64,000 nt of DNA from Mantamonas sphyraenae STR306 (Eukaryota > Protista > CRuMs). How positions within the stretch are numbered: position 1 is the stretch's first letter; each line of letters opens with the position of its first letter. The notes under the pieces were generated by a model. The model worked only from the letters and a program-made list of their open reading frames with translations, did no database searches and had not been told where the DNA came from. The position numbers and the translations under genes were made by a program. Shown piece after piece: positions 20,241 to 64,000 of this stretch. The DNA lies in contig JAPMXV010000024.1 of NCBI GenBank assembly GCA_026936335.1, forward strand, positions 68,303-132,302, written 5' to 3'.

Positions 20241-20249
20241 TGTGATGCA

Positions 20250-21129: not shown

Positions 21130-21165
<36 letters not shown>

Positions 21166-27155: not shown

Positions 27156-27200
<45 letters not shown>

Positions 27201-28279
27201 GAAGAGTGGCAAGAAGAGTGGCAAGACCACAAAGAAGCAGAAGACGACGAGCAAGACAGGGACAAAGAAGGGCGGTGTGAAGAGCAAGAAGATGGGAAAG
27301 GAAGTGGAGGAGGAAGTGGAGGAGGAAGCGGCTGTGGTTGGAGCAGGAGACCTTTCAGAGAGCGTGCAGGAACGGCTGGGAAAGCTGGAAGCTGTGGATG
27401 TGGAGCGTGTGCTTGGACACATGCCACGACGCAAAGTGCCTGGACATGTGCTGGACAAGATTGCCATGGCTCGGATGGACAAGTTGGAGGCTGGAGAACT
27501 GCTGACGTATGAAGCGAAGCAGCAGGAGCAGGAACAGGAGGAGGAGGAGCAGCATGAATGTCATGGCCATGGACGTCGTGGTGGTGGTCATCGCGGTGGT
27601 CATCGTGGTGGTCATCGAGGTTGCCATCTGCATCGCCATCACGGACATCATCACGGACATCATCACGGTGGACGACATGGGGAACGAGGACAGAGTCGAC
27701 ACAAGGCTCGGTTTGTGAGCCATGTGAGCTATGGGACGGATGCCGGGGGTGCAGTGTGGACGCAAGTTTACAAAGACGTGGCGTCTGCGGAACGAGAGCG
27801 AAGAAGCATGGCCTGCGGGAGCGCAGGTGGTGTTTGTGAGCAAGAAGAACGGAGACGCAATGGGAGCAAGCGAGGCTGTGCCTGTGGATGTGGTGGCTGA
27901 GGCAGGAGAAGAGGTGGACGTGAGTGTGGAGATGGAAGCACCTGAGGCAGCTGGAAGCTACAGCGGGTTCTGGAGGATGGCAGATGGGGAAGGGAAGAAG
28001 TTTGGACAACGATTCCGATGCCAGATTGTGGCAGTGGAGGAAGAGGTGGAGGAAGAGGTGGAGGATGAGGATGAGGAAGAGGAGGATGAGAGCAGCGGAA
28101 GCAGCAGCTCTTCTTCGTCTGAGAGCGAGTCTGAGTCTGAGATGGACTCTGAGAAGGAGTGGGAGAGCGAGCTGGCGACACTTGCGCTGGTGGGTCTGAC
28201 GGATCGAAAGGCATGTGTGGACGCACTGGAAGCATGTGAGGGAGATCTGCAGGCAGTGATCCAGTCGCTGCGTGGATAG
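26731..28279 (+). pseudogene. NBR1-like copy 2, frameshifted at ~27745 (or consensus error)
   Basis: gatgccgggggtgcag versus gatgctcgggtgcag in copies 1 and 3: +1 nt splits the ORF at the start of the FW domain. Confidence 0.72.
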
Positions 28280-28489
28280 GCTGAAGAGAGAGTGTACAGG
28301 GATTGAGAATGAATCGCAAAGGACGAACCCGGGGAGGTTGAGACTCCCTCCCACACACAACCAACAACAACAAACAACAACAACAACACAACAAGGTTGA
28401 TTGCATTTGAGAGCGTCTTGAACAGAGTGGAGAGTGGGAAGTGGAGGAGGAGGAGAGGAAGTAGAGCTGAGTGTGTTGGCCAGGTCGTT

Positions 28490-31400
28490 TCATTGCAGAT
28501 CCGAGACGGTGTCCACAAAGAAGGCTGGGATGAGTGCGACAAAGGCAAGGACCAGAGTGAACAGGGAAAAGTCAAACACAAAGGCCACCGTGAAAATCAT
28601 GTTGAAGAGGTTGGAGAAGAACTTGACGGCACGTGCACCGCGGCCTGTCTTGAGTTCAAGCATAGCATGGCCCTGGGCGTCTTGTGCCAGGTCCAGGACG
28701 GGTGGGTTGTTGAGCACCTCGACAAACTTGCCTGCGATAAGTGTGGGACCGGGGGCAATCATAAAGATGAGCGCACTGCTACGCCCAACATTGGCAATGA
28801 CGGCCTCCTGTTGGGAATCGACATCCCACTTGTCGTCGTCGTACTTGCGGGATCGAGGCAGGATGCTAAACGCCTTGACCATGTACGAGTTCCACAGGCC
28901 CACAGCAAGCATGAGCAGGCGGAACACACCAAAGAGCACTTTGACCACGATGACGTGAGGGATGAGCTGGATGAGTGCACGACCCAGTCGCACGGCAGCA
29001 GATGGGTTCTTCTGCGCCTGCTCCTCGGTTTGTTCACAGGTGATGGTTCCCATGGCCTTGTGCACCAGCGGATCATAGCCCGTAAACATCTCCCAGTGGG
29101 CGTAGATAAAGAGGGACAGCACCACGAGGGTAAACACAAAGCCAAAGTTGCGTGCCTCCAAGTCGGTGGCCCCACAGTTGCGTCCGCCTCCGAGACCCAG
29201 GCTCAAGTCGCCAATGGTGACAATGATGACCTGGGAGACGTAAAACACGGCAGCAGTGGCCAGATTGGCCACCAGAGTTGCAAAGGCCTTGCCCTTGGCT
29301 GTGGTCTGGCGCTTCTTCAGGCTCTTGAAGTACATGGAGAGCAGGAGGAGGAACTCGCGCTTGAGCATGAGACGCAGGAACAGGGCACCCATGAGGACCA
29401 GGATGGGGGCAATGAGAGTGGCAAATCCGTTGCAGTTCCACTCTGTGGACACCAGCGTAAAGTCGATGGAACGCAGAAAGGTGATGAACAGCCGCACGAG
29501 TTCGCCAAACCCACCCAGGGCCAGCTCGATGGAGGGGTACACCAGCTCAAAGTCATAATCAGGCAGAAACTTGCTCAAGGAGGTTGCCATCAGCGATACG
29601 TTGAAGATGGTCTTGACGACACCCGCAAAGAGGGTGATCAGGTTGATGATCACGATGAAAATGACACTGCCGATGCTCAGGTGATGGCAGGATCCGTCGT
29701 CCTGCCCCGTGTGTGCATACGGTGAGGATGATGACGATGATGACGAGGTTGGCAGTTGGGTTTGGATCTGACTCATTTCGACGGAATCCCCGCCCGCGGA
29801 GGCCATCTCGGCAGCAGCAGCCTTGGCAGCCTCGTGTTGCTGCTTGGCCATGGCAGCCTCTTCGCGAGCCTGCTTCTCCAGGGCCAGGTTGTGCATGTTG
29901 ACACCAGAGACCTGCATGTCACGCAGGATGTGGTATTCCACGAATCGGAAGCCCGAGTCGAAAAAGTGCTCGATGGCATGGTAGTGGCGCACGGGGTCCA
30001 TCTTGCCACCAATCGCCGCTCCAATAAACACATAGGCCACAAAGACACATGCCACAATGATAAACACAGTGGGCACGGTGGATTCGTTGGGGTCGGCAAT
30101 CTCCACCCGGACCTGGAAGCGACGCTGTTGAGTCGACGTGGTGACCCGTCCGCTGTTGCCATACCTTCCCGTGATGCCCACGGATACGTAGAGGCGCATG
30201 TTGTCTGAAGAGGCAGGCATGCTCTTGGGGTCGACCTTGAGGGTGGTGTTGCCCACCAGAGGGCCTCGCACGGTGGCCACGCAATCGGTGCAGTTGAAGC
30301 CCTCGACCCACACCCATGGCATCAACAGGGGTCTGTGGTCCGGTTGAATCCGGGGAGGACTTCCCCACTTGGCCATCAGGACCACGTCACCCGCGAATGC
30401 ACTTGGGCTCCGCGAGGAGCTCTCTGTGATGGCAGCCAGTTTGTCCTCTGCGTCGTAGGTCCAAAAGGCGGCCGCTGGGGCAGTGTGCACCCACAGACGC
30501 GAGTTGGAACGGGATCCCTGGATCCAAAAGGTGACGAGCTCGCTCTCGTTTGTGTGGAGGCCAAGGAAGGAGAAGCTGTTGTACAGCTCGCGCATGTCTT
30601 GTGTGCGATTGGCGTAGTGGCAGTTGATGCCACTGGTGCCTGGGTTGCAGACACAGACGCCAAGGTCGGAACACGTGCCCTTGCACTTGTCCATGCAGTT
30701 TGGAGAGCGTGTGACCTTGACCTCGACGGGACAGGACATGTCCAAACCCGACGATGGGGTGCTGATCTTCAGAAGCTCGGTGACCTGATTGCGTCGGTAC
30801 AGGTACAGGCATTCTTCCACGTACCGCGGCCTGCGGAATGCGTTGTAGAGTTGGTTGAGGGTAACGGTGCGTGGCACACCGGGGACCACATCGTCGAAAG
30901 TGTAGCTGTCACGCCGTTTCATGTCGTTGCCACACATCATCTCGTACTGGACGTCGATGGAATCGCGGCATTCGTACTGGGAGAGACGATTGAGTTGCAC
31001 AGTCAGATAGTTGGTGGTGGCTGGCCCAGGGTGCTGAATGTACACCGTTCGATTGACGTGTCCGACGGCATAGGTACGAGACACGCCCGAGAAGGGTTGC
31101 TCCTGATTCCGATGTTCACACACGGTGCCCAAGTAGCCGGGGTTGCAAGTGCACACGTAGTTGTAGGATGTGTCGTTGTGGATGACCAGTCCACGTCCGA
31201 AGCATGCAGGTCTGAGGCTGACAGAGAGTGTGGCGTTGCACGGGGTGTCGGGCGAGGTGTTGACCAAGGAGAAATCGACAGTGAGATCCGAGGCCGCGTC
31301 CTCAGCCAACACGTAAGAGCGACAACCACACGAGAAGGGTCTGTCCAGAAGCCAGTAGGAATACTCGTTGAACCCGGTGTAGCTGTGGGGCCATCGGTTG

Positions 31401-32304
31401 GCGCAGTAGCCCGCCTGGGTGTCGTTGTACGAGGTGCCACAAAACCCAGTCACCCCCATGCGGCAGGATGGGTTTGAAAACGACGTCGAGTACGAATAGT
31501 AGAATGGTTGGCCACCGGGTAGGAAGCGTGGCTTGTAGGAAAAGTAGGTGGCATTGCCTGGGGCCAACTCGACCGTGGTGGAAAAGGACGAGGTCAACGT
31601 GACGTTGGCTGTGACGTCCACAGGGGCAGGGGAGGCACATGTGGGGCCAGCCCAGCCTGGGAAACAGCGACAGTAGGCGTAGGTCTGGGCATCCACCTCA
31701 CCGTGACCTGGGGTGCACACAGGCTGGGTGTCGGCGGTGATGGAGAACGCGCAGGACGCCGTGTTTTGTGTGGAGGCATACACGTTGGCTTGGATCAGGT
31801 AGGTGATGGTGGTGGCACATGTGTAGCCATTGCACCCTGACCTTGCCTTTGGGTAGAAGTTGTAGGTGAACGGGGAGGTGCCGACGCTGCGGGTGGCCTC
31901 GCTGCAGCGGCGGTCGCTGTTCATGTCTGCCACGGATCCTGGGTAGCATGAAGAGAACACAAGGACCGATGGCGTGTATTGACTGAGTGTGGGGAATGGC
32001 ATGTGGGTCAGTGAAGTGAATGTAAGAGTGGGGAGGGGAGGCGGATCCCGGACCAGATGTCAAGCGGAGGATGGAGTTTGCGGCCCACCTACCATCCGGT
32101 GCGGTTGAAGATTGTGAGCGACAGCCGGACGTCTTGGTTCCTGTCGATGGTAATGGCCCATGTCTGGTTGGAACGGCCGTTGGAGTCCGTGTACGTTGGA
32201 TAGGTGGCGTCGATGGTGACGGTTGACGGAAAAGGCGCCGGAATTTCAGTGATGGTCGCTTGGGCGGCGACATCGCATGCGAACAGCAGGGTCAAAGCAA
32301 GCAT
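28490..32304 (-). CDS. EGF-like multi-pass membrane protein, copy 2; exons 32304-32093 and 31982-28490
   Basis: ORF translation appears identical to copy 1 at offset 6038. Confidence 0.85.
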
Positions 32305-32762
32305 TGTGATCCCAAGGTTGGTGGCGGTGTGCCTCCCCAGGATCGGGGGTGTGATGTGGTTCCAGCGCGGCATGTGTGCTTGCTTGCAATTTCGGTGGTG
32401 CACGTGGTGGACAGATCGGTGGTGGTGGTGGCGATGGGGAGATGGGTGGGAATGTGTGTGTTGGTGGATGGCTGATGTGTGGTATTTTCGCGGAAGAGTG
32501 GTGGGGGGAAACTCGGAACGGTGTCGGGTGCAGAACTCGGAACTCGGAACACAGGGCAGTTGGGGTTCAAAAGGCGCACTCACGCGCACTCACCCAACTT
32601 GTCATCACAAAAACACACACACTCGGATAACCCAAGAGGACGAGTAACGATACAACACAACGACTGCGAATACAGACAGCAGCGCAAGTGAAACAAGTGA
32701 TAGCGAAAGCGAGCAAACGAAACGAAATCAAGCAAACCCAAAACAACCAAAAACGCAACTCG

Positions 32763-34298
32763 ATGACGATGAGCAAGAGTGGAAACAACACCAACGAGAC
32801 GACGATGACAAAGAACAGCACCACCAGCAACAACAGCGACGTGAAGACCATGGTGTCTGTAAAGGCAACTGTGGGAGCGGAGACACGGCGCTTCGGGGTG
32901 TGGAGCGAGAGGCTGTGCGAGGAAGGAGGACTGGATGGACTGGTGCAGCAGATTGCAGAAGTGTTTGGGAAGAAGGAGGAGAGGATGAGCCGAATGGTGA
33001 TGTCGTACGCAGACGAAGACGGAGACTGGGTGCGTATGAGCAGCGAGAAGGAGCTGGGACACGCGGTGGAACTGTGTGTGATGCAGAGCAAGCAGAGCGG
33101 GCGTGAGCCTGGGGTTCTGCGGGTGAAGCTGATGACACGAGTTGCAGCACGACGAGCAGCCAAGGCAGCCGAGGAGTCGATGATGCCAAGCAGCAGCAGC
33201 AGCAGCAAGAAGAGTGGCAAGAAGAGTGGCAAGACCACAAAGAAGCAGAAGACGACGAGCAAGACAGGGACAAAGAAGGGCGGTGTGAAGAGCAAGAAGA
33301 TGGGAAAGGAAGTGGAGGAGGAAGTGGAGGAGGAAGCGGCTGTGGTTGGAGCAGGAGACCTTTCAGAGAGCGTGCAGGAACGGCTGGGAAAGCTGGAAGC
33401 TGTGGATGTGGAGCGTGTGCTTGGACACATGCCACGACGCAAAGTGCCTGGACATGTGCTGGACAAGATTGCCATGGCTCGGATGGACAAGGTGGAGGCT
33501 GGAGAACTGCTGACGTATGAAGCGAAGCAGCAGGAGCAGGAGCAGGAACAGGAGGAGGAGCAGCATGAATGTCATGGCCATGGACGCCGTGGTGGTGGTC
33601 ATCGCGGTGGTCATCGTGGTGGTCATCGTGGTGGTCATCGAGGTTGCCATCTGCATCGCCATCACGGACATCATCACGGACATCATCACGGTGGACGACA
33701 TGGGGAACGAGGACAGAGTCGACACAAGGCTCGGTTTGTGAGCCATGTGAGCTATGGGACGGATGCTCGGGTGCAGTGTGGACGCAAGTTTACAAAGACG
33801 TGGCGTCTGCGGAACGAGAGCGAAGAAGCATGGCCTGCGGGAGCGCAGGTGGTGTTTGTGAGCAAGAAGAACGGAGACGCAATGGGAGCAAGCGAGGCTG
33901 TGCCTGTGGATGTGGTGGCTGAGGCAGGGGAAGAGGTGGACGTGAGTGTGGAGATGGAAGCACCTGAGGCAGCTGGAAGCTACAGCGGGTTCTGGAGGAT
34001 GGCAGATGGGGAAGGGAAGAAGTTTGGACAACGATTCCGATGCCAGATTGTGGCAGTGGAGGAAGAGGTGGAGGAAGAGGAGGATGAGGAAGAGGAAGAG
34101 GAGGATGAGAGCAGCGGAAGCAGCAGCTCTTCTTCGTCTGAGAGCGAATCTGAGTCTGAGATGGACTCTGAGAAGGAGTGGGAGAGCGAGCTGGCGACAC
34201 TTGCGCTGGTGGGTCTGACGGATCGAAAGGCATGTGTGGACGCACTGGAAGCATGTGAGGGAGATCTGCAGGCAGTGATCCAGTCGCTGCGTGGATGA
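32763..34298 (+). CDS. NBR1-like selective autophagy receptor, copy 3 (slightly diverged)
   Basis: Same architecture; shorter poly-Ser, one extra GGHR unit, several SNPs, TGA stop instead of TAG. Confidence 0.88.
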   Translation: MTMSKSGNNTNETTMTKNSTTSNNSDVKTMVSVKATVGAETRRFGVWSERLCEEGGLDGLVQQIAEVFGKKEERMSRMVMSYADEDGDWVRMSSEKELGHAVELCVMQSKQSGREPGVLRVKLMTRVAARRAAKAAEESMMPSSSSSSKKSGKKSGKTTKKQKTTSKTGTKKGGVKSKKMGKEVEEEVEEEAAVVGAGDLSESVQERLGKLEAVDVERVLGHMPRRKVPGHVLDKIAMARMDKVEAGELLTYEAKQQEQEQEQEEEQHECHGHGRRGGGHRGGHRGGHRGGHRGCHLHRHHGHHHGHHHGGRHGERGQSRHKARFVSHVSYGTDARVQCGRKFTKTWRLRNESEEAWPAGAQVVFVSKKNGDAMGASEAVPVDVVAEAGEEVDVSVEMEAPEAAGSYSGFWRMADGEGKKFGQRFRCQIVAVEEEVEEEEDEEEEEEDESSGSSSSSSSESESESEMDSEKEWESELATLALVGLTDRKACVDALEACEGDLQAVIQSLRG

Positions 34299-34704: not shown

Positions 34705-36931
34705 TCACCCAGCCACTACGACCCACCCAATCACCCTCTCCATCACCTCATCCGGCAGTGTCACCCACCCTTCCCACCCTCTCTCCTCCACATACTCCTC
34801 CATCCCACCACACTCAAACATCACCTCTCTCTCTTCACCATTCATCACCAACGCCACCTCTATCGCCTCATCCACCTGCTCACCCCATCCAATCCAATGC
34901 CACGCCTTCCTCCAGCCCTCCTTCCTCACCATCTTCACCGTTTCGATCCTCGGCGTCGCACCCCACGCCCGCAACACCTCCACAATTCTCTCATCCCCTC
35001 GCTTCACAGCCCTCTCCAGCGCCGTCTTCTTCCCCTGCTCCCCTGCACATGTGTTCACAGGCACACCCCACTCCCTCAACGCAGCCATCTGTTCCACAAT
35101 CCCACACTCCACAAACTCGGCATGTTTCTCCTTGTTTCTCTCCATCAGTGACTGCATCGCGTCCTCGTTAACACCCTGGAGCTTCCAGCACGACCGATTC
35201 CCTACCATTGCCTTTGTCAGCGCTGCTTCACCTTCCGCACCGATGATGTTGCCATCTAGGTCCAGTTTCTGCAAGCTGCTGTTCCGACTCAGCGCCTGCC
35301 CCAGTGCTGTGGCTCCTTCTGCCCCGATACTGTTGCGGGTGAGATTCAGTATCTGCAAGCTGCTGTTCCGACTCAGCGCCTGCCCCAGTGCTGTGGCTCC
35401 TTCTGCCCCGATACTGTTGCTTGTGAGATTCAACATCTGCAAGCTGCTGTTCCGACTCAGTGCCTGCCCCAGTGCTGTGGCTCCTTCTGCACCGATCGCA
35501 TTGTTTTCGAGGTTCAGTGTCTCCAAGCTGCTGCTCGCACTGAGTGCCTGTGCCAGTGCTGCTGTTCCTTCATCCCCGATGGTGTTGCTGTGGAGGTACA
35601 GTGCCTGCAAGCTACTGTTCTCCCTCAGTACCTGCGCGAGTGCTGCTGCACCTTCTGCACCGATGCTGTTGTTCTCGAGGTCCAGTCTCTGCAAGCTCTT
35701 GTTCGCACTGAGTGCCTGCGCGAGTGCTGCTGCTCCTTCTGCCCCGATGGTGTTTCTGTCGAGGTACAGTGACTGCAAGCTGCTGTTCTCACTGAGTGCC
35801 TGCGCCAGTGCTGCTGCTCCTTCGTCCCCGATGCCGGTGCTACAAAGGTTCAGACTCTGCAAGCTGCTGTTCTCAGCCAGGGCCTGTGCTATTGCTGCTG
35901 CTCCTTCTGCCCCGATTCTGTTGCGGCTGAGGTCCAGTCTCTGCAAGCATCTGTTCCCACTCAGTGCACGCCCCAGTGTTTCTGCTCCTTCTGCACCGAT
36001 ACTGATGCTCTGCAAGTACAGTGTCTGCAAGCTGCTGTTCCCACTCAGTGCCTGCCCAAGTGCCGCTGCTCCTTCTGCCCCGATGCTGTTGCTACTCAGG
36101 CTCAGTGTCTGCAAGCTGCTGTTCTCACTCAGTGCCTGCGCCACTGCTGCTGCCCCTGCTGCCTCGATTCTGTTGAGGCTGAGCAACAGTGTCTGCAAGC
36201 TGTTGTTCGCTTTCAGTGCCTGCGCGAATACTGCTGCTCCTTCATCCCCAAGGCTGTTGAGGCTGACGTGCAGTCCCTGCAAACCACTGTTCTCATGCAA
36301 TGCCTGCGCAAGTGCTGCGGCTCCTTCAGCCCCGAAGAAATTGCCGCCGAGGTTCAGTGTCCGCAAGCTGCTGTTCTTACACAATGCCTGTGCCATTGCT
36401 ACTGCTCCTTTTGCCCCGATGTTGTTGCTCTCGAGGTCCAGTTTGTGCAAGGTGCTGTTCTCACTCAGCGCCTGCGCCACAGCGGCTGCTCCTTCTGCCC
36501 TGATGCTGTTGTCCCAGAGAATCAGTGTCTGCAAGCTACTGTTCTCACTCAGTGCACGTGCCAGTGCTGCTGCTCCTTCTGTTCCAATGCTGTTCCTGCT
36601 GAGGTGCAGTGTCTGCAACGTGCGGTTCACAACCAGCGCCTTGGCCAGGGCGGCTACTCTTTTGTCACCAAGCCCGATAAAACGGACATCCAATTCCTGT
36701 GTGTGGCATGTTGATGTCAACATACGTCCCATCCTTCCTATGTATGTGTACTGTACGCCCCACAACCTCCCTCTATCCATCCCCACTTCCCCTTGTGCGA
36801 TCACCAAACCCTCTCTCAATTTCTTTCCACACCGGCTTACTTACCCTTCCCTGATCCTTCACAGCATCGATAATCCGCTCATTGTCCTCGCTATGCAACA
36901 ATTTCACCCATTCATTTCTTCCCAAGCCCAT
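34705..36931 (-). CDS. RNI/NLRC3-type LRR protein (~17 x 28 aa) + one ankyrin-like repeat + C-terminal F-box-like motif; exons 36931-36845 and 36696-34705
   Basis: 84-nt repeats NSSLQxLxLxxNxIGAEGAAALAQAL; KTALERAVKRGDERIVEVLRAWGA (ankyrin-like); WVTLPDEVMERVIGWV (F-box-like). 87-nt first coding exon homologous to that of the paralog; GTAAGT...CACAG intron. Confidence 0.88.
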
Positions 36932-37598
36932 ATTTCCTGCGAGAAGTTTGAAGTCAGCAACTTGAATTCCGCACTCTTTCTCGAGCCTCCTACCCAGCCA
37001 CACACCCATGCGCACAAGACAAGCAACTCCTCGACGTCTCCGCCCTTCCATACCTGATGTGTACAGTGTGTATGCGCTGGATGCACTCGCGCACGAAGGA
37101 CGAATGACGCTCCACCCACTTTCATTCGATCCAAGACCCCACATTCAAAGCCAAGGGGAAAGATGAATGGGAAGTGGCACCAAAACCTCCAACGGATGGG
37201 TAGCCACCAGTCGACCACCATCACCACTGGCATGATATGTTCGCAGGAAGCCCAGAAAATCAACGTCCTGATCACCGAAACGAGCCCAAAGTGCCGGCGC
37301 AGTGTCGGACACAGTCCCCAGAAGAGTCAAGGCGACCAGCCCCGACGCAGGAACCACTGCGATTGGGAACAAGGCGGCGTTCAATGGTCGCTGGCAAGCC
37401 ATGCGGTTCCACTTGGCGACGGTGCTGGATGATCATGGGATGACGCTTTCTTGCGCGCCATCATCGTTCAGAGGAGGGGGGGAGGGGGGAATCCCAATGC
37501 AATGCTTGTGTTGTGTGTATATACCTGTGTGTGTGCTGTGATATTTCGTGTGCTCAGTTCGTAGTCCAGGCAACAGCGGTGCGGAGCACTGTCTGAAG

Positions 37599-53682: not shown

Positions 53683-56197
53683 ATGTTTTTGGGAACAGAT
53701 GAATGGGTGGAATTGTTGCAGAGTGGGGACCATGGGCGGATTGTGGAGGCTTTGGAGGCTGAGGAAGCGGTGAGTTGGCGAGAAAGCGGGAGGTTTTGGT
53801 GAGCGTGACGTTGCGACGTTTGGTCGTCGCACAAGGGGAAGGGAAGGAGGGATGGGGGTAGGGTGGGTGTGATGGTGTGTACGCAGCGTGGGAAGTGTGT
53901 TGACACGACACATACAGGAATTGAACCTTGCAAGGGAGGAGCTGGGAGACAAAGAAGCAATTGCACTTGCGCATGCACTGGGAAAGAACCGCAGCTTGCA
54001 GCAGGTGTACCTCGAGAACAACAGGATCGGGGACAAAGGAGCAGCTGCACTTGCGCGTTCCCTGGCTGAGAACGGCAACTTGCAGACACTGGTCCTCAGC
54101 AACAACGACATCGGGGATGAAGGAGCAGCAGCACTGGCGCAGGCACTGAGTGAGGTCAGCAGCTTGCAGACACTGGACCTCAAATACAACAGCATCGGGG
54201 TAGAAGGAGCAGCGACACTGGCGCAAGCACTGAGCGAGAACAGCAGCTTGCAGACACTGAACCTCGGGAGGAACAGCATCGGGGCAGAGGGAGCAGTGGC
54301 ACTGGGGCAGGCACTGAGGATTAACAGCAGCTTGCAGACACTGGACCTCGAGATGAACAGCATCGGGGCAGAGGGAGCAGTGGCACTGGGGCAGGCACTG
54401 AGGATTAACAGCAGCTTGCAGATACTGAACCTCTGGGGCGACAGCATCGGGGACGTAGGAGCAGCAGCGCTGGCACAGCCACTGAGTGAGAACAGCAGCT
54501 TGCGGACTCTGATTCTCAATCGCAACAGCATCGGGGCAGAAGGCGTAGCAGCACTGGCGCAGGGACTTGGTGAGAATTGCAGCTTGCAGACACTGAAACT
54601 CTGGTCCAACGATATCGGGGACGAGGGAGCAGCAGCAGTGGCGCAGGCACTGAGGATTAACAGCAGCTTGCAGACACTGATGCTCACAAACAACAGCATC
54701 GGGGACGAAGGAGCAGTAGCACTGGGGCAGGCACTGGGCGAGAACGTCAGCTTGCAGACACTGAAGCTCGACGACAACAGCATCGGGGCTGAAGGAGCAG
54801 CAGCACTGGCGCAGGGACTGAGTGAGAACCAGAGCTTGCAGGCACTGTACCTCGACGAGAACAGCGTCCGGGACAAAGGAGCAACAGCACTGGCCCAGTC
54901 GTTGAGTCAGAACAGCAGCTTGCAGACACTGATGCTCATAAGGAACAGCATCGGGGACGAAGGAGCAGTAGCACTGGGGCAGGGACTGAGTAAGAACAGC
55001 AGCATGCAGACACTGAACCTCGGAGACAACAGAATCGGGGACGAAGGAGCAGTAGCACTGGGGCAGGGACTGAGTAAGAACAGCAGCTTGCAGACACTGA
55101 TGCTCAGAAACAACAGAATCGGGGACGAAGGAGCAGTAGCACTGGGGCAGGGACTGGGCGAGAACAGCATCTTGCAGACACTGGGACTCGACAACAACAA
55201 CATCGGGGACAATGGTGCAGCAGCACTGGCGCGGGCACTGAGTGAGAATAGCAGCTTGCAGGCACTGCGCCTCTTCTGCAACAGAATCGGGGACCAAGGC
55301 GCAGCAGCACTGGGCCAGGCACTGAGTGAGAACAGCAGCTTGCAGACACTGAACCTCAACAGCAACAGCATCGGGGACGATGGAGCAACAGCAGTGGCCC
55401 AGTCGTTGAGTCAGAACAGCAGCTTGCAGACACTGAACCTCAACAGCAACAGCATCGGGGACGAAGGAGCAACAGCACTGGCGCAGGCACTGGGGGAGAA
55501 CAACACCTTGCAGACACTGAACCTCGAACAGAACCGCATCACAACAGAAGGAGGCGCAACACTTGCTCAGGCGATGAATGGCAATCGGTCCTGCTGGAGA
55601 ATCCACGGTGTTGGCAATGGCGCGTTACGGGCACTGTTGGAGAGAAACAAGAAGCAGCACGTGGTGTTTGTGGAGTGTGGGGATGTGGAGAAGATGAGAG
55701 AGTTGAAGGAGTGGGGGGTGCCAGTGGACACGTTTGCAGGGGAGAGGGGGAGGAAGAATGCGCTGGAGAGAGGAGTGTCGCGAGGGGATGAGAGGATTGT
55801 GGAGGTGTTGCGGGAGTGGGGTGCAAAGCCGAGGATGGAAACGGTGGAGATGGTGAGGGGGGAAGGGTGGAGGAAGGCGTGGCATTGGATTGGATGGGGT
55901 GGACAGGTGGATGAGGTGATGGAGGTGGCGTTGGTGATGAACGGGGAGGAGAGGGAGGTGATGTTTGAAGCAGGTGGGATGGAGGCGTATGAACCGACTG
56001 CACAGTGGATGACACTGCCGGATGAGGTGATGGAGAGGGTGATTAGGTGGGTGGGAAGGGGTGCTGCACCGGCAAGGGTCGCTGTGAGGAGGTCAGACGA
56101 GGCGAGGAAGCAACAGCGAGAGTTGAAAAGGAAGAAGAGGAGGGAGCGGAGGTTGAGAAGAGGCAACATATCGAGGAGGATGGAACGATTGGGGTGA
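53683..56197 (+). CDS. RNI/NLRC3-type LRR protein (~19 x 28 aa) + ankyrin-like repeat + C-terminal F-box-like motif; exons 53683-53769 and 53918-56197
   Basis: Paralog of 34705-36931: same 87-nt first exon (LGxxEWVxLLxS), same intron position; KNALERGVSRGDERIVEVLREWGAKP; WMTLPDEVMERVIRWV; extra basic tail. Confidence 0.88.
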
Positions 56198-56424
56198 TCA
56201 GCAGGATAAATGGAAGTCCTTTTGATGCGATAGGGGTCGGAGGCAGGGGAGGAGGAAAGGGTGGAGGTGACTTGGTGGATTCGGAGGAAGGGGAGGGTGA
56301 GGGGATGGCCAGAGAGCGAATGTCGCGTGTGCGGGCAAACAAGGCAACGATTGTGTCGATGCGAGATGTGGGGACGTGGCACAGGCGTAAGTGTGAAGAG
56401 GCAGAATAAGAGGAAGAACTCTCG

Positions 56425-56976
56425 CAACCACCATCCAAACCACCACCATCCCTTCGCCAGCACCCATTGCCACTGGAATTACACCAGCCAGCGTCACCTT
56501 CCCCCTCCACCCTCACCTCCGGCGCCTCCCAAACAGGCCCCGTGCGGCACTTTTGCGCACCCCAAGCCGCGTTTGTAAGGAGCGTCCTTCACCACAATCA
56601 CCATCCAAACCACCACCATCCCTTCGCCAGCACCCATTGCTACTGGAATTACACCAGCCGGCGTCACCTTCCCCCTCCACCCTCACCCCCGGTGTCTCCC
56701 AAACTGACCCCGTGCGGCACTTCTGCAGCCCCAAAACCGTTGTGTAACCGAGGTGCTTCAACCACAACCACCACCCAGACCACCTCCAATCCCTCACCGG
56801 CACCTATTGCTACTGGAATTACACCAGCCAGCGTCACCTTCCCCCTCCACTCTCACCTCCGGCGCCCTCCAAACTGAGCCCGTGCGGCACTCTCGCGCAC
56901 CCCAAAGTCCCTTAATCCTGCACTATCTGTCTTCACAACCCCCATCCAAACCTCCACCATCCCTCCGCCAGCACCC
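56425..56976. repeat. C-rich tandem repeat, 170-171 bp unit, ~3.2 copies
   Basis: ccatccaaac-like unit starts at 56431, 56601, 56771, 56942; core actggaattacaccagcc..gcgtcaccttccccctccac nearly invariant. Confidence 0.92.
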
Positions 56977-59900
56977 GAAGAAGACGTACAGCGACTTGAC
57001 GGACAAGACGGTGTACGCAGGCGTGAGTCTGTACTCGCCGAACGACAAGGTGACGTTCCAGCGCGTGGGCGGCGCCGGAGGCGGTGGCGAGTCTGGCAAC
57101 AAGACGTATGGCTCGCCCGAGCTTATCCGCAAGGCGCGTGTGAACAACCTGCGTGCGCTGGGCTTTGGCCAGGCGGCAGCGGAGAAGGCGCTGGACGAGG
57201 TGTGCCCCGACGTGGACGACGAGTTTGACGTGGAGGGCGTGATTGCGTGGATGATCGAAAGGAGCGCGGAGCTGGAGAATGTGGAGGACTCGACGGCGCA
57301 GGCGGAGGAGGAGGACGCGCAGGAGGACCTTGTGTTTGACCTGGGCAGCCTCGGATCGATGGGCGAGAACCAGGCGTTCGAGGTGCTGAACGCACCGGGC
57401 CAGAGCAAGAAGAAGAAAGAGAAGAAGGAGAAGAAGGAGGGCAAGGAGCGCCCGACGCTAACCAAGAGTTTCAACGCAGGCGGACCTCCGTGGAGGACTG
57501 TGCTGCTGTCGCAGTTTGCGAGCTCGACCGAGGCACTGTGCGTTGTGTTTGCGCGCCAGGCGTTCTTTTCGCTGATGAAGAACTGGCCGAGCGCACACAC
57601 GTTCAGCGTGGAGAAGCTGGGTGGCGTGAGCACGTTTACGCACCTGCTGAAGCTGAACGCGGCGGCCTACGAGGACGACCTGGAAATGGGCGACAAGGAG
57701 ATGGCGCAGTCGACATCGCCGATTGTGCTTCTGCGCAACAAGTTGGTGGAGGTTCTGCCGAGCGAAGACGCAGACGCGATGAAGGTGAAGCAGGCGATTG
57801 TGCTGGAGATTGTGAGCAGCCTGATGAAGCTGATCGAGGCGCAGAGCGGCGCCACGGAGACCCAGATCAACAACGACAAGGACGCGCTGGAGAAGCCGAA
57901 TGCCGCGCTTGCGTGCTGGCTCGCCGAGACGCTGTTCTCGAAGGAGTCCAACAAGGTGGCTCCGGAGGATGCACGCCGCGTGGTGAGCGTGCTGTTCACG
58001 TACCTTGCACACGGCAGCAACAATATGGGCACCCGCATCATGCGCCTGCTTGCAGTTGTGTTGCGCAGCGTGACGGGCGAGATCGATCTTCCCGCGATCA
58101 AGCAGCTGCGCAAGGCCATGTTTGAGCTGTACAAGGAGAAGGGCCCCAAGCCGGGCGCCAAGACGTTCACGCTGCCGCCTGCACACCTGCAGGTGCTGGT
58201 GGAACTGATGGTGAGCACTCGCCATTTGGCAACGGGCAGCAAGAAGGCGGCACCCGCAGATGTGAAGGGCAAGGGCAAGGCCAGCGAGAGCGAGGCCGAG
58301 GTGGAGGTTGTGGAAGTGGAGGTAGAAGGCGGTGAAGGCGCAAGCAGCGGCGGTGCAAGCAGCGAGAGCGAAGAGAAGCCGAGCAGCAGCAGCAGCGGCG
58401 ACGACGACGAGACGCAGACGTGGTTTGAGGACGTGGGCGAGGTGGCCGACTTTTTGCACGGGTCGCTGAACAACAAGCCGCTGTCGGAGACGGTGGTGGC
58501 CAAGGTGCTGATGAGGACGGACACGAGCAACAGCAAGACGTTTGAGAGCGCGCACCCGTACAAGAAGGCTCGCAAGGGCAAGAAGATTTCGATGGAGCAG
58601 GTGACGAGCGTGAGCGTGACGCTGGACGAGAAGTGCAAGGTCGCGGAGGGCGACTACATCTTCTTCACGCGCGACGAAGAGGGCAAGGACATGCTGGGCA
58701 TGTGGACGAACCCACCGGATGACCACGACGAGGAGAAGAAGAAGGCCGGTCGCACGTTTGAGTTTGACACGGGCAAGTTCTACTGGGTGTTCCCGTGCAA
58801 GCCGACGGTGCTGTTTGACAAGAGCACGGCACACAACGCACTGCGTGTGAGCGACGACCTGAAGACGCTGGAGGCAGACGAAAGCTACTGCACGTGGCGC
58901 TCGATCATGTGCAAGACACCTGCGCGTGGACGCTTCAGCTTCATTTGCGAGATTGAAAAGTGCCAGAGCGGCAACATCATGCTGGGCGTGAGCGAGCAGG
59001 GCCACGAGCCGAGCTACTGGATTGGCCAGACGTCGTCGACGCAGGCATGGTCGTACTATGGCTGCAGCTACAAGTACCACGACGGAAGCAGCTCGTCGTA
59101 CGGTGGCAGGATGAACAGCGGCGACACGATCACGGTGACGGTGGACGTGGACGAGGGCTGGATCTCGTTCAAGCACAACGACACGGACTACGGCAAGGCG
59201 TACGAGGATCTGCCCACGGACAAGGACCTGTTCCCTGCGATCTCTCTGTACGACGCCGGAGACAAGGTGATCTTCAAGCCAGCGAGCCTGGGCAAGGAGA
59301 ACAAGAGGGAGAGCGGCAGCGCCAAGGAGTGGGGCGTGAGCTTCACGGTGAACCCGACTGGCTACACGAAGGAGGGCGTGTTGGAGGGCCATGGAGAACA
59401 TGAAGGGCGAGTTTGACGCGTTTCAGGAGCGCCACAGCGCGTTTGGCAAGACGGAGGACCAGCAGCTGGTGGAGGTGGCGACGAACTTTGTGCGCAAGAG
59501 CAAGCCCGACAGTGACCCGAGCGACATCAAGGACGTGACGTCGTTTGCACCGAGCAAGGAGGAGCTGCTTGGCTACCGCGCTCTGTCGGACATGGACACG
59601 TCGTTGCTGCAGGAGCGCCTTGTGGTGCTGCAGCAGATCAACGGCTCGATGAACGTGTTCCTGCCGCTTGTGGACCTGACGCAGATCGACACGCGCTTCA
59701 GCTTGGCAAACGACTTTTCGCGTGCGCGCGGCCTTGTGTTTACGGCACCAAAGTTGCAGCTGTGGCAGCAGGGTATGGACGGCACGTACTGCAGCGACTA
59801 TCGCCCGGACATCACGATCAACCGCCAGAAGACGGTGGATCTGTGGGACCAGGAGCCGAGCGAGGAGACGCTGACGGGCAGTGTGTTTGGCCAGATTGCG

Positions 59901-60930
59901 GCAGCTCTCAAGACGCACGTGAAGAACCTGCGCCAGAGGCCGAGCAGCCAGGCGTGGCACGTGGACTTTACGGGCGAGTCGTCGATCGATGCAGGCGGAC
60001 CGTACCGTGAGACGTTCTCGCAGATGATCCGCGAGATCCAGTCGCCGCACATCGACCTGCTTGTGCATGTGGGCAACGTTAAGAGCGACAACGGTATGCA
60101 CCGTGACACGTTTGTGCCGAACCGGAGCGGCAAGGGCCAGGTGTACAAGGACCAGTACCAGTTCCTGGGCAAGCTGATGGGCGTGTGTCTGCGCCAGAAC
60201 ATGACGATGGAGCTTGCGATGTCGCCTGTGTTCTGGAAGAAGCTGGTGCAGTTTCCGGTGACGCGTGCGGATCTGGTGGCCATGGACACGATGTGCGTGC
60301 AGTGCGACGACGCCATCGTGGACAATTACAAGAAGGGCGGTGACGTCGGAGATGTTCACGACGCATCTGACGGATGGCACAGAGGTGGAGCTTGTGGAGG
60401 GTGGCAAGCACAAGAAGGTGACGTTTGAGAACCGCCACGAGTACGTGCGCCTTGTGGAGCAGGCTCGTCTGAACGAGTTTGACACGCAGGTGGGCTGGAT
60501 CCGCGAGGGTCTGGCGTGCATGGTGCCGGTGCGCCTGTTTTCGCTGTTTACGTGGCAGGACATCCAGCTGCGCATGTGCGGTGTTGCCGACGTGCCGGTG
60601 GAGCTGCTGAAGAAGCACACGTACTACAGCGGGTACACGAAGGACAGCGAGACGGTGAAGAAGTTCTGGGATCGCATGGAGAACTACATGCCGGAGGAGA
60701 GGCAGCTGTTCCTGCGCTTTGTGTGGTGCCGATCGCGTCTGCCGTTGGGCGAGGACGCGAGCTACACGTTTACGCTGAGCACGGCGTACCTCAACACCGA
60801 TACTGCTCTGCCCGAGTCACACACGTGCTCGTTCCAGCTGGATCTGCCGAGCTCGTACGGCACCACCGAGGTGATTTCGCAGCGTCTGGCGTACGCGTTT
60901 TACAACTGCGCGGATGTGGACAACGACTAA
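56977..60930 (+). pseudogene. 5'-truncated SPRY(end)-UBA-SPRY-HECT E3 ubiquitin ligase with two frameshifts (~59387, ~60340)
   Basis: Begins in a SPRY tail (VYAGVSLYSPNDKV); UBA LRALGFGQAAAEKAL; FESAHPY; full SPRY; HECT motifs FTGESSIDAGGPYRE, FLGKLMG, RQLFLRFVW, LPESHTCSFQLDLP (catalytic Cys present). Split over three frames. Confidence 0.82.
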
Positions 60931-61171: not shown

Positions 61172-63609
61172 TCATTCGAGGCGCTGGCGTTTGGAGGAGG
61201 AGGAGGAGGAGGAGGAGGAAGGGTCTTTGCGCTTGGGGAGGGTGAAGGAGGGGATGCGGCAGGCGTTAACGAGTGCGATGGTGGTGGGGCGGGTGGTGAT
61301 GTGGGGTGTGATGCGGTCGAGGAGGGTGTGGAGGAGGGTGTGCAGTGTGGCGTCGCTGGGTTTGGATTTGTCGAGCCAGGCGATCTTGAGGGAGAGGGAG
61401 GTAACGCCGCGGGTGAGGGTGTTGCTGATGGCAACTTGAACCTGCAGGCTGGTGAGTCGTGGTCTGAGGAGGCGGACAAAGAAGGCCAGGTCGACAGGCG
61501 GCACGGCAACGTTGCCCAGCGCCAGGATGATGTGTCGCAGCAAGGAGAGCTGGCTACCGGTGTTGATCAACTCACGCAGTGCCTGGTTCTCATTTGCGTG
61601 CTGATGGCGAAGGTGCTTGGCTGCGCGTGCTTTCATGTGTGCCAGCAGCGTCTGGAACTCCCGCGCCGTGCAGCTGCCACGCTCGTCGTTCGGACCAGTG
61701 CTCCAACCACTCCGCACAGACTCAGGATGCCACTTGTCCACGTTGGTGGTGGTAAGGTGGTGGTCGTAGTCGCATTGTGTCCAGTGTGGGTCGCTGTCGT
61801 TGTCAGCAGGGCGTCGTGCTTTCTGCAGCACCAGCTTGGTCTGCGTGTGCTCCTTCCAGGTGGTGGGATGGGGCCTGTTGCCGAGAGTGTCCATCTCTGT
61901 CATGAGCAGGTGGAGGAGGGCGTAGTTGGGGTCGCCGTGGTCGTGTGGCTCCTCCAGCCAGCACACCTTCAACCCAGCCTTTGTCACACCCATGGCCAGA
62001 CCAGCGTGGTCAATGGCAAGGCTGCACGTGCGTTGATCCACATCACGGCCGAGAAGGGTGAGGCAGAAGGTCATGTCTCCCTGGGAGAGGGGAATATTGC
62101 CGAGTGCAAGCTGAATCTGTCGGACCAGCGTCAGCAGGGTGCCATGGCAGACCACAACACGCGCCTGCAGGGTCATCAGGTCGGGGATGTCGTAGATAGG
62201 ATGCTCATTGGCCAGAGTGTGCATGTGGTTCAGCAGTGCCGTGTGCTCCTTCTTGTTCCTGTGGCTGCGCTCGTCACAGTATCCAATTGTCCACCCTTTG
62301 CGCACAACACCACCTGGCAACTTGATCTTCTTGTTCACGCCTGTGTTCTTCCGTGCGCCGGTGTCTCCGTTCTTGGCCCTCCTTGCTCGTGTGCTAGACG
62401 TTCCTGTCTCTGTGCCACTGCCAGCCGTGACCCTGATCCTGCGCCGTCCGCTGCCTTTTTTCTGTTGGGGACCAGTACGTCGGCTGTTGTGGCCTCTGCG
62501 GCGTCGTGTGCGGCTGCTGCTTGTGCGTCTCGGCTGCCACTCGTCCAAGTCCTCCTGCTCCATGTCGTCTGTGTCGTCGTCGCTGTCGTCTGGCGGCATG
62601 TACTCCTCATTCATGGCATCACCAGAGTCTGCAAAGCTGAGTGATCCCTGAATTTCCACCTCGTCGTCCACGTGCTGCTGGGTTGCGTCGTTTGCCTCGC
62701 CTTCTTCGTACGCCTCCATCCCTGAGCTGGTCATCCACTCTGAGTTGCTGGAGATTGACCGTGGTTCACGGTGGCCAAAGTTCAGGAACATCAGGTCCTC
62801 CACGTCGCCGGTGTCATGTGTGTGCGTGTCCTGGTCTGCGTCGTCGTCGTCGCTGTCTCCAGTCTGCCGTGTGGACTGGTGGGAGGAGGACGACGATGTG
62901 GTGGTGGACGTGGTCCGTGTGATGCCGACAAAGGCAGGACTGATACGTTTGGGGACGCGGTTGTGGTTTCTGGTGGGTTGAGCAGGCGGACGGGGCAACG
63001 GAGTCTGAGCGAAATGCATCTGGGCGGTTTGACGCGGCTGAGGAGGCGGCGGAGGAGGGTAGGCGTAGTATGGATGGCCTTGATGAGCATATGCGGTGTG
63101 CTGCTGGGAGTGGGTGTTGACAGGGACCCAGATGATGGGTGGTGGTGGGTGCCGGTACGGGTTTTGTACGCCAGAGGCGGGCAGCATGTTCGGAAACGGC
63201 TGGGCAGCCATGGGAGGGACCATGTACGCATAGCTGTGGGGAAGACGAGAGGGGCGCGGTGTGAACGGTGAGCGGAAGGCGGGATGGACGCCGTCAGGGC
63301 AGAAGCGGGGTGAAGGGAGGCTGGAACGAGCAAAGAGGGAAAACGGACGAGATTGGCAGACGGGGAAACTGGCAACGGGGAGAGCAGTGACAGGGGACAG
63401 GGGATCGGAGAAGAGCGGTGAAGGCAGCAGCGGTGGTGATGGGGAAGGGGAGATGCTTGGGAGGAGTGTAGAGAAGCGACGGAGGCATGGAGGAGGCAAG
63501 CAAGCGGGAGAAGCGGGCAGTCAGAAAACGGGGTGGAAGGCAGAACGCACGCTGGGTAGGTGTTGGGTGTGTGTTGCTGCTTCGGAGTGCTTGAGTAGTC
63601 CTTGTCCAT
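61172..63609 (-). CDS. Telomere-proximal orphan protein: Pro-rich, acidic and basic N-half plus a duplicated C-terminal domain; exons 63609-63551 and 63233-61172
   Basis: Phase-2 intron GTGCGT...CCACAG gives MDKDYSS...YPA|YAYMVPP. Internal repeat GWTIGYCDER...LLNHM...LALGN...GVT..LKVCWL versus GWSTGPNDER...LLAHM...LALGN...GVT..LKIAWL. Confidence 0.72.
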
Positions 63610-63873
63610 GGTGGTGGTGGTACTTAAGTGTATGTGGGTTGTGTTGGACTGTTGGAGGGTGTTGTGGGTGTTGGTGATACTTTCGTTGAAGGCGGATGGG
63701 CAGTGCTGACTGCGCGGCGTTGCAGGACGACGGCCACTCACAAGTGACATTTCCACTCCCACCCATTGCCCACAGCCCCATGTCACCACCCAACTCAGCC
63801 ACCCCACCAGCAGACACAAGCACAACTCAATCGACATAGACCGGACTCCTCATCACCAATATCTACAAACATG

Positions 63874-64000
63874 TTAGAGTTAGGGTTAGGGTTAGGGTTA
63901 GGGTTAGGGTTAGGGTTAGGGTTAGGGTTAGGGTTAGGGTTAGGGTTAGGGTTAGGGTTAGGGTTAGGGTTAGGGTTAGGGTTAGGGTTAGGTTAGGGTT
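63874..64000 (+). repeat. Telomere repeat (TTAGGG)n, G-strand toward the window end
   Basis: One TTAGAG variant, then a TTAGGG run with one TTAGG variant near 63988. Confidence 0.98.

What the first reader, a model, noticed from the sequence alone, without database searches (positions are those of the whole stretch)
53683..56197. LRR - ankyrin - C-terminal F-box-like architecture (PRANC-style) in two paralogs
Seen: after the LRR solenoid both paralogs keep one ankyrin-like repeat (~55754-55830; ~34955-35030) and W-x-x-LPDEVMERVI-x-WV (~56006-56053; ~34720-34770), conserved more strongly than the LRRs. Known: cellular F-box/LRR proteins carry the F-box N-terminally, whereas a C-terminal truncated W..LP.E(I/V)...I motif typifies poxvirus and Orientia ANK-PRANC/F-box proteins. 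Inference: an inverted SCF adaptor with a variable LRR substrate-binding face.
Basis: partly seen in the sequence, partly recalled or inferred. Interest (0 to 1): 0.8.

Follow-up and report, generated by a model that had tools for sequence, protein, structure and literature searches.

The report
Subtelomeric variable-LRR family, F-box-like end helix
The two genes belong to a family of at least 150 mostly chromosome-end genes in the protist Mantamonas sphyraenae that join a variable leucine-rich-repeat binding surface to a constant tail whose last helix looks like the first helix of an F-box, but the link to the cell's protein-degradation machinery is still unproven.

Summary
Both paralogs have 17-20 RI-type LRRs, two degenerate ankyrin repeats and a constant 66-aa tail ending in W-x-T-LPDEVMERVI-x-W-V. 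The tail is under stronger purifying selection than the LRRs (dN/dS 0.34 against 0.62).

These are not two genes but a family of at least 150 copies (388 candidates) in Mantamonas sphyraenae. Many lie in arrays, and many sit about 4 kb from a telomere. Paralog 1 is 7.8 kb from one.

The F-box reading is neither established nor excluded.
- **For:** the last 25 columns align in register with helix 1 of the genome's own F-box profile. The score is 22.4; 300 shuffles gave a maximum of 16.3.
- **Against:** true helix-1-only F-box profiles score 40-43. No Pfam F-box, PRANC or SOCS-box match appears. A genome-wide F-box scan finds 73 canonical boxes and none in the family. The protein ends 3-8 residues after the helix, so helices 2 and 3 are absent.
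- **Unresolved:** AlphaFold2 leaves the tail unfolded. SKP1 binding could not be tested.

Best reading: interchangeable cytosolic LRR binders that dock through one constant tail to a common partner, with SKP1 the leading candidate (about 0.27).

The scan met this family four times before on other DNA of this genome.

The parts
53683..53769 (+). Paralog 1, exon 1: 29 codons from the ATG, a constant N-terminal peptide with no hydrophobic signal-like stretch
   Evidence: It is conserved in paralog 2 and in other copies, with the donor at codon 29.
53770..53917 (+). Paralog 1, predicted intron (GTGAGT ... ACAG). The acceptor is chosen by reading phase and by its conservation in both paralogs. There is no RNA evidence.
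   Evidence: This is an inference. An alternative donor/acceptor pair at 53799/53886 is also phase-compatible.
53918..55591 (+). Paralog 1, RI-type LRR array of 20 repeats of exactly 28 aa
   Evidence: Pfam LRR_6 E 1.6e-97 with 18 stretches. Repeat chain. Entropy peaks at repeat positions 5, 7 and 8.
55592..55651 (+). Paralog 1, LRR C-terminal cap and linker helix
   Evidence: AlphaFold2 pLDDT about 90 or higher. N32 and C35 are conserved.
55652..55858 (+). Paralog 1, two degenerate ankyrin repeats
   Evidence: The family profile matches ankyrin-1 and DARPins over positions 20-88. Helix pairs are confident. Pfam Ank_4 is below its cut-off. Foldseek top hits are DARPins but with E above 0.4.
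55865..56062 (+). Paralog 1, constant 66-aa tail, the most conserved part of the family
   Evidence: Alignment A4 has mean column identity of 78%. dN/dS is 0.26-0.34. There is no PDB or Pfam relative. AlphaFold2 pLDDT is below 60.
56006..56053 (+). Paralog 1, terminal amphipathic helix W-x-T-LPDEVMERVI-x-W-V, resembling F-box helix 1
56063..56197 (+). Paralog 1, non-conserved basic extension and stop codon. Most paralogs stop 3-8 residues after the helix. The homologous DNA is read in another frame in other copies.
36845..36931 (-). Paralog 2, exon 1 (29 codons), followed by a GTAAGT donor
36697..36844 (-). Paralog 2, predicted intron. An alternative in-frame acceptor lies at 36751. There is no RNA evidence.
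   Evidence: This is an inference.
35191..36696 (-). Paralog 2, RI-type LRR array: 17 perfect 28-aa repeats plus degenerate ones upstream
34924..35130 (-). Paralog 2, two degenerate ankyrin repeats, placed by alignment with paralog 1
   Evidence: (Ank_4 E 0.011).
34711..34908 (-). Paralog 2, constant 66-aa tail
34720..34767 (-). Paralog 2, terminal W-x-T-LPDEVMERVI-x-W-V helix. The stop at 34705-34707 lies inside a GGGTGAG.

Best explanation
The two genes are members of a Mantamonas sphyraenae-specific family of at least 150 copies, largely subtelomeric and arranged in tandem arrays. The proteins look cytosolic. Each has a constant 29-aa first exon, 17-20 RI-type 28-aa LRRs whose beta-strand (concave-face) positions are hypervariable, two degenerate ankyrin repeats, and a constant 66-aa tail.

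Most likely mechanism: the LRR face is an interchangeable binding surface, diversified by duplication and recombination near telomeres. The constant tail plugs every copy into the same cellular partner. Its last helix (W-x-T-LPDEVMERVI-x-W-V) is probably unfolded alone and folds on docking.

Shown here: the architecture, the copy number, the telomere linkage, the variable face, and purifying selection on the tail.

Inferred: that the tail is a docking module. The partner is not identified. SKP1 is the leading named candidate; see the first rival.
For: - **Family size and location:** 150 scored hits of 388 candidates at 52-100% identity. At least 39 of the 150 lie within 25 kb of a contig start, and at least 13 lie at 4.0-4.6 kb with the 3' end facing the end of the contig.
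- **Telomeres:** telomere repeats are at the starts of C5, C19 and C29 and at the end of the window.
- **Organism:** the assembly statistics match the published M. sphyraenae genome.
- **LRRs:** LRR_6 at E 1.6e-97, with perfect 28-aa repeats and entropy peaks at positions 5, 7 and 8.
- **Ankyrin pair:**
- **Tail under selection:** 23 invariant columns. dN/dS is 0.26 in the tail against 0.49 in the LRRs. In the window pair, dS is equal across regions (0.32-0.42) while dN halves in the tail. Most copies keep open frames of 400-900 aa.
- **Tail conserved but not self-folding:** pLDDT is 41-63 in context and 52 alone, as expected for a segment that folds on a partner.
- **No relatives:** none in PDB, Pfam or the word-indexed protein database.
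Against: - No partner has been identified, and no binding test gave a verdict.
- No RNA evidence could be obtained, so expression and the exact 3' end rest on ORFs alone.
- Family-wide dS is lower in the tail (0.36) than in the LRRs (1.1). Part of the tail's uniformity could therefore come from gene conversion, or from misaligned LRRs inflating the LRR figures.
- Low AlphaFold2 confidence may simply reflect a shallow, paralog-only alignment.
- Some copies are short (open frames of 126-300 aa) and are probably pseudogenes.
Confidence: 0.6

Rival explanations
1. One reading: the terminal helix is a minimal one-helix C-terminal F-box of the PRANC/CP77 style. It would dock into SKP1, making each copy a substrate receptor of an SCF (CUL1) ubiquitin ligase whose LRR face selects the target.
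For: - The motif fits the helix-1 signature, including the W at -3 and the S/T at -1.
- It aligns in exact register with the first 25 columns of a profile built from 30 of this genome's own canonical F-boxes. hhalign gives score 22.4, P 1.2e-4 and probability 55% (85% for the last 25 columns alone). All 300 column shuffles score lower (mean 8.2, sd 1.7, maximum 16.3).
- Canonical Mantamonas F-boxes such as L067 and L072 have a very similar helix 1 (LPTEVVDRIGGFL).
- The protein language-model search puts F-box clusters nearest, though at a sub-threshold 0.76.
- The placement after ankyrin repeats at the C-terminus is as in PRANC proteins.
- Cowpox CP77 binds Skp1 with only the first helix, and most Skp1 contacts come from helix 1 and the loop before it (PMC4353913).
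- The genome has SKP1 and a second SKP1-like gene.
Against: - All the support rests on the same roughly 15 residues.
- True helix-1-only F-box profiles score 39.5-43.3, about twice the tail's score.
- Pfam F-box matches 1 of 41 tails, at E 0.27. PRANC and F-box-like match none. The unrelated RHH_5 matches 15 of 41 through the same LPDE stretch, so the motif is not specific.
- The PF12937 genome scan finds 73 canonical boxes and no family tail.
- Helices 2 and 3 are absent.
- The invariant 40 residues before the helix have no counterpart in F-boxes.
Confidence: 0.27
2. The tail is not a docking site for a shared partner. Instead it acts within the family: as a self-association (oligomerisation) element, or as an intramolecular lid that folds back on the LRR or ankyrin surface to regulate binding or stability.
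For: - The tail is amphipathic, Trp-rich and strongly conserved together with the ankyrin pair.
- It is not predicted to fold on its own.
- In three copies the module is internal and followed by further ankyrin repeats, so a free C-terminus is not strictly required.
Against: AlphaFold2 did not pack the helix onto the ankyrin/LRR cap in the 191-aa model. No test of self-association was possible.
Confidence: 0.1
3. The family is mostly non-functional subtelomeric duplication. The tail's uniformity then reflects recent copying and gene conversion rather than function.
For: - The copies lie in subtelomeric arrays.
- Some copies are truncated.
- dS is lower in the tail than in the LRRs family-wide.
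- The DNA after the helix is read in different frames in different copies.
Against: - dN/dS is 0.26 in the tail over 698 pairs, with dS of 0.36.
- More than 100 copies keep long open frames.
- Variation concentrates at the concave-face positions rather than being spread uniformly.
Confidence: 0.05

Closest known systems
Poxvirus and Orientia ankyrin-repeat proteins with a C-terminal truncated F-box (PRANC, PF09372), including cowpox CP77 with a one-helix box
   Same: A repeat scaffold is followed by a short C-terminal LP-x-E helix. The families are multi-copy and lie near genome ends. CP77 shows that one helix can be enough for Skp1 binding (PMC4353913).
   Different: This family is encoded by a free-living eukaryote. 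The scaffold is RI-type LRRs plus only two ankyrin repeats. There is no PRANC profile match. Only one helix is present. SKP1 binding is untested.
Cellular F-box/LRR proteins (FBXL family, e.g. Skp2)
   Same: An LRR binding domain is combined with a W-x-S/T-LPDE-type helix resembling Skp2 helix 1.
   Different: The FBXL F-box is N-terminal and has three helices. It passes Pfam thresholds, as do 73 F-boxes in this genome. From my own knowledge, FBXL repeats are of the cysteine-containing type rather than the 28-aa RI type.
Ribonuclease-inhibitor / NLRC3-type LRR proteins (Pfam LRR_6)
   Same: A 28-aa repeat with the N-x-I-G-x-x-G-A signature and a strong LRR_6 match.
   Different: There is no NACHT or other signalling domain. 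Instead there is an ankyrin pair and an orphan tail.
ASB proteins (ankyrin repeats plus C-terminal SOCS box)
   Same: Ankyrin repeats are followed by a C-terminal adaptor-docking box. The motif T-L-x3-V-x3-V loosely recalls a BC box.
   Different: There is no SOCS-box profile match. The BC-box Cys/Ser/Ala position is Val. There is no Cul5 box.
Subtelomeric variant gene families of protists, e.g. the Trypanosoma brucei ESAG8/LRRP leucine-rich-repeat genes (from my own knowledge, not tested here)
   Same: Telomere-linked arrays of a diversifying repeat-protein family.
   Different: A different lineage and domain set, with no sequence relationship shown.

Membership tests
F-box (PF00646 / PF12937) | Significant match to the family profile | tested here: not met
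   No hit at E up to 10 on either full protein or on the tails. One of 41 tails matches at E 0.27. The six-frame PF12937 genome scan finds 73 boxes over the cut-off, none at a family tail.
F-box (PF00646 / PF12937) | Three-helix domain of about 40-50 residues (H1-H3) | tested here: not met
   ORFs end 3-8 residues after the single helix in most of 44 copies. The longer extensions are not conserved and are read in different frames.
F-box (PF00646 / PF12937) | Helix-1 signature L-P-x-E-h-h-x-x-h-h-x-x-h | tested here: met
   The signature is invariant in 41 tails. It aligns in register with the genome's own F-box profile at score 22.4, against a shuffle maximum of 16.3 and 40-43 for true helix-1 profiles.
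F-box (PF00646 / PF12937) | Binds SKP1 | tested here: inconclusive
   The one complex prediction allowed, with a proxy SKP1, returned 'no answer' and counts neither way.
PRANC (PF09372) | Match to the PRANC profile | tested here: not met
   No hit at E up to 10.
PRANC (PF09372) | C-terminal position directly after ankyrin repeats | tested here: met
   The ankyrin pair lies at 55652-55858 and the helix at 56006-56053, close to the end of the protein.
PRANC (PF09372) | Truncated F-box with two helices (H1-H2) | tested here: not met
   Only one helix follows the LP. CP77 is a one-helix exception in the literature.
SOCS box / BC box | Profile match, and a BC box followed by a Cul box | tested here: not met
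   There is no SOCS_box hit among the four families that any tail matches. Nothing follows the helix.
RI-type leucine-rich repeats (LRR_6, PF13516) | Repeated 28-29-aa units matching the profile | tested here: met
   E 1.6e-97 with 18 stretches and E 2e-80 with 16 stretches. There are 20 and 17 perfect 28-aa units.
Ankyrin repeat | 33-aa helix-turn-helix units matching ankyrin profiles | tested here: met
   The family profile matches two consecutive repeats of many solved ankyrin proteins, with best single stretches at i-E 0.003-0.005. Helix pairs are confident. Single-sequence Pfam is below its cut-off (Ank_4 E 0.011) and Foldseek E is above 0.4, so the repeats are degenerate.

The most novel reading that the evidence does not exclude
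A free-living, deep-branching eukaryote encodes its own PRANC-style system. At least 150 rapidly diversifying cytosolic LRR receptors each end in a one-helix C-terminal F-box that plugs into SKP1 (or the SKP1-like paralog). That would form a large 'recognise-and-degrade' repertoire against prey, viral or selfish-element proteins. It would also be a cellular counterpart, or a possible source, of the C-terminal F-boxes known so far mainly from poxviruses and intracellular bacteria.
Probability: 0.25. Interest if true: 0.8.

Novelty: new variant of a known kind. Interest (0 to 1): 0.55.

Why it matters
If the copies are expressed, this family accounts for a few per cent of the genes of a 25-Mb genome. 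That genome belongs to a lineage (CRuMs) near the base of Amorphea.

A telomere-linked, diversifying set of intracellular LRR binders with one constant output module has the design of an innate recognition repertoire. Finding its partner would show what such a system is wired to in an early-branching protist.

If the partner is SKP1, the C-terminal truncated F-box, so far treated as a hallmark of viral and bacterial mimicry, would have a cellular example. The minimal requirement for SKP1 docking (one helix) could then be studied in a natural family of more than 100 variants.

If the partner is something else, the 66-aa tail is a new interaction module.

Tried and rejected
1. **RNA evidence.** The gene model, the 3' end and expression are therefore unverified.

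2. **SKP1 complex.** The native SKP1 (C35, about 37.3-38.5 kb) is split by introns. As a proxy I used a full-length database SKP1, P0012, which is 87% identical over the C-terminal 75 residues. Complex prediction of that proxy with tail residues 112-191 returned 'no answer' (scores 0.24, 0.57, 0.26 against a mark of 0.34). This is no evidence either way.

3. **Big profile search.** I used the 156-aa ankyrin-plus-tail profile. Multi-repeat ankyrin proteins filled all 150 listed rows, so the search only shows that no close full-length relative ranks among them. A tail-only profile would have been the better query, and the cap is now used.

4. **Word-indexed searches of the tail.** One used a 769-aa query and one a 247-aa query. 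Neither found anything. Together they cover proteins of about 136-1345 aa only.

5. **Hidden downstream exon.** Many stop codons lie inside GGTGAG(T), which looks like a splice donor. However, the sequences after it diverge into unrelated classes, long-tailed copies lack the donor, and no conserved downstream coding stretch appeared. A hydrophobic reading frame after paralog 2 has no counterpart after paralog 1. I rejected this idea provisionally.

6. **Ancestral full F-box in the ankyrin-fused copies.** In the C5, C35 and C54 copies the residues after the helix do not match F-box helices 2-3. Only three such copies exist, so they are probably secondary fusions.

7. **Other readings of the motif.** I considered a BC box/SOCS box, a circularly permuted F-box and a Gly-end C-degron from the sequence alone. 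None has tool support.

8. **Folding the tail alone.** Mean pLDDT was 52, too low for a meaningful fold search, so I ran none on it. Foldseek on the 191-aa model gave only weak DARPin hits.

Full report
**What is at the coordinates**

The + strand ORF 53888-56197 and the - strand ORF 34705-36819 are 60% identical over about 670 residues.

Paralog 2 has the same exon at 36931-36845, with a GTAAGT donor. Both have a phase-compatible, conserved ACAG acceptor just before the first LRR. The same exon with its donor at codon 29 appears in other copies.

All protein work used the main exon by reference. The first exon has no hydrophobic stretch, so the proteins look cytosolic; this is an inference from the sequence.

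**Domains**

- **LRRs.** Pfam finds only LRR families, with LRR_6 at E 1.6e-97 and 2e-80. The arrays are 20 and 17 perfect 28-aa RI-type units. Across 36 units, entropy is near zero at the scaffold positions. It peaks at positions 5, 7 and 8 (3.0-3.5 bits), followed by positions 3, 10, 24 and 25. The variation therefore sits mainly around the beta-strand, on the concave face.
- **Ankyrin repeats.** After a capping helix come two degenerate ankyrin repeats. A profile of 41 family tails matches pairs of repeats in ankyrin-1, DARPins and RNase L over profile positions 20-88. AlphaFold2 models this part at pLDDT of roughly 86-96. Single-sequence Pfam (Ank_4 E 0.011) and Foldseek (E above 0.4, though the top hits are DARPins) stay below threshold.
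- **Tail.** The last 66 residues are the most conserved part, with 78% mean column identity and 17 invariant columns.

**It is a large telomere-linked family**

A six-frame search of the window's own genome with the 160-aa ankyrin-plus-tail segment gave 150 scored matches out of 388 candidates, at 52-100% identity. Most have open frames of 400-900 aa. Many lie in tandem arrays, for example on C29, C69, C73, C75 and C76.

- At least 39 of the 150 lie within 25 kb of a contig start.
- At least 13 lie 4.0-4.6 kb from the start on the minus strand.
- Mirror-image copies lie 4.6 kb from the ends of C35, C57 and C68.
- C5, C19 and C29 begin with CTAACC repeats.
- The window itself ends in TTAGGG repeats at 63880-64000. 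Paralog 1 is therefore 7.8 kb and paralog 2 about 29 kb from a telomere.
- The last 2.8-4 kb of the window are 89-92% identical to the ends of C5 and C19.

The assembly figures (25,061,354 bases, 78 contigs, longest 751,365, one contig of 375,077) equal those published for the Mantamonas sphyraenae FALCON assembly. That paper also reports TTAGGG at most contig ends. It does not mention this family, and no paper in the library pairs Mantamonas with leucine-rich repeats.

**Selection**

I computed Nei-Gojobori estimates on 38 copies.

| Region | Family median dN | Family median dS | Family median ratio | Window pair dN/dS |
|---|---|---|---|---|
| LRR | 0.467 | 1.115 | 0.49 | 0.264/0.424 |
| Cap + ankyrin | 0.219 | 0.616 | 0.41 | 0.201/0.320 |
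| Last 63 codons | 0.117 | 0.359 | 0.26 | 0.124/0.367 |

In the window pair, dS is alike in all three regions while dN halves in the tail. The tail is therefore under stronger purifying selection than the LRRs.

The family-wide dS gradient has two possible causes: misaligned repeats, or some gene conversion in the tail. It does not by itself show diversifying selection.

**Is the tail an F-box?**

Negative results:

- No F-box, F-box-like, PRANC or SOCS-box hit appears at E up to 10 on the full proteins, on the last 84 to 232 residues, or on the ankyrin-fused relative.
- Across 41 tails scanned one by one, F-box matches one at E 0.27. The unrelated RHH_5 model matches 15 through the same LPDE stretch.
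- A six-frame PF12937 scan of the genome, which serves as a positive control, finds 73 canonical F-boxes over the cut-off and none at a family tail.
- A tail profile has no relative among PDB sequences at E up to 10.
- In 44 copies the ORF stops 3-8 residues after the helix. The few longer extensions are charged, are not conserved, and are read in different frames in different copies. F-box helices 2 and 3 are therefore absent.

Positive results:

- I built a profile from 30 of this genome's own canonical F-boxes and compared it with the tail profile by hhalign.
- The last 25 tail columns align in exact register with the first 25 F-box columns. The score is 22.4, P 1.2e-4 and probability 55%. 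For the 25 columns alone the probability is 85% and P is 6e-6.
- 300 column shuffles of the tail give mean 8.2, sd 1.7 and maximum 16.3.
- As a calibration, true helix-1-only profiles made from half of the canonical boxes score 39.5-43.3 against the other half.

The tail helix is therefore much more F-box-like than chance, but only about half as F-box-like as a real member.

A language-model look-alike search puts F-box clusters nearest, but at 0.76, below the level that shuffled proteins often reach. All of these pointers rest on the same roughly 15 residues.

The literature adds that poxviral F-boxes lack helix 3, and that CP77 binds Skp1 with helix 1 alone. Most Skp1 contacts come from helix 1 and the loop before it (PMC4353913). 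The missing helices therefore lower the claim 'it is an F-box' more than the claim 'it works like one'.

**Structure**

With the 41-sequence alignment, AlphaFold2 models residues 1-140 of the 191-aa C-terminal segment confidently. Confidence drops to pLDDT 41-63 over the most conserved 50 residues, where the terminal helix is predicted but not packed. The tail alone gives mean pLDDT 52.

A strongly conserved segment that is not predicted to fold alone fits a segment that folds on a partner. The alignment is shallow and paralog-only, so this is weak evidence.

**SKP1**

The genome has one canonical SKP1, split by introns, and a divergent SKP1-like gene 4.5 kb upstream of it. I left the exons unjoined and used a database SKP1 as a proxy. 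The single complex job returned no verdict and is listed only under what was tried.

**Relatives elsewhere**

Two word-indexed searches of the tail found nothing. The exhaustive profile search was swamped by ankyrin proteins because of my choice of query. I can say that no close relative surfaced, not that none exists.

**Variants**

In three subtelomeric copies (C5:6282-7949, a 96% identical copy on C35, and one on C54) the same module is internal. It is followed by about 30 unrelated residues and then canonical ankyrin repeats. The residues after the helix do not match F-box helices 2-3. These copies look like secondary fusions.

**Conclusion**

The best-supported reading is a lineage-specific family of interchangeable cytosolic LRR binders that share one constant docking tail. 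I put SKP1 as the partner at about 0.27.

The scan followed up this same family four times on other pieces of this genome, with the same negative profile results. New here are the calibrated profile-profile comparison with the genome's own F-boxes, the two-exon gene model, the region-wise dN/dS figures, and the identification of the assembly.

Noticed in passing
window 63880-64000 and 61200-63880: The window ends in TTAGGG telomere repeats. The preceding 2.8-4 kb are 89-92% identical to the ends of contigs C5 and C19. This stretch includes a 775-aa ORF on the minus strand (61172-63499) with no Pfam match. It is a shared subtelomeric element.
   Followed up: partly
window 56753-60930 (+): Directly after paralog 1 lies a SPRY-plus-HECT ubiquitin-ligase gene. 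SPRY matches at E 2e-13 and HECT at E 4.6e-43. The gene is spread over three reading frames, so it has either introns or frameshifts.
   Followed up: partly
window about 56420-56800: Two to three tandem copies of a unit of about 150 bp, rich in CCA and CAC, lie between paralog 1 and the SPRY-HECT gene.
   Followed up: no
G000:C35:33786-33926 (L043) and C35:37348-38504 (L042, L074): The canonical SKP1 gene is split by introns. A divergent SKP1-like paralog (PF01466, 53.5 bits) lies 4.5 kb upstream of it.
   Followed up: partly
L031:6282-7949 (+) (G000:C5), plus G000:C35 about 6983-7483 and C54 about 31700-33343: These are family members in which the constant tail is internal and followed by canonical ankyrin repeats (Ank_2 E 2.9e-25). 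They are probably read-through fusions.
   Followed up: partly
L041:4723-5775 (-) and window 37145-37402 (-): A canonical F-box protein with a hydrophobic, membrane-like body lies tail-to-tail with a family member on C68. A fragment with the same hydrophobic motif lies just upstream of paralog 2 in the window.
   Followed up: no
3' ends of many paralogs (L003, L005, L007, L011, L018, L019, L021, L023, L029; window 34705-34711): The stop codon is the TGA inside GGTGAG(T), a sequence that looks like a splice donor. No conserved downstream exon was found, and RNA data are needed.
   Followed up: partly
window 20000-34000: Base composition and skew repeat with a period of about 6 kb. This suggests a tandem duplication of a gene block upstream of paralog 2.
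   Followed up: no
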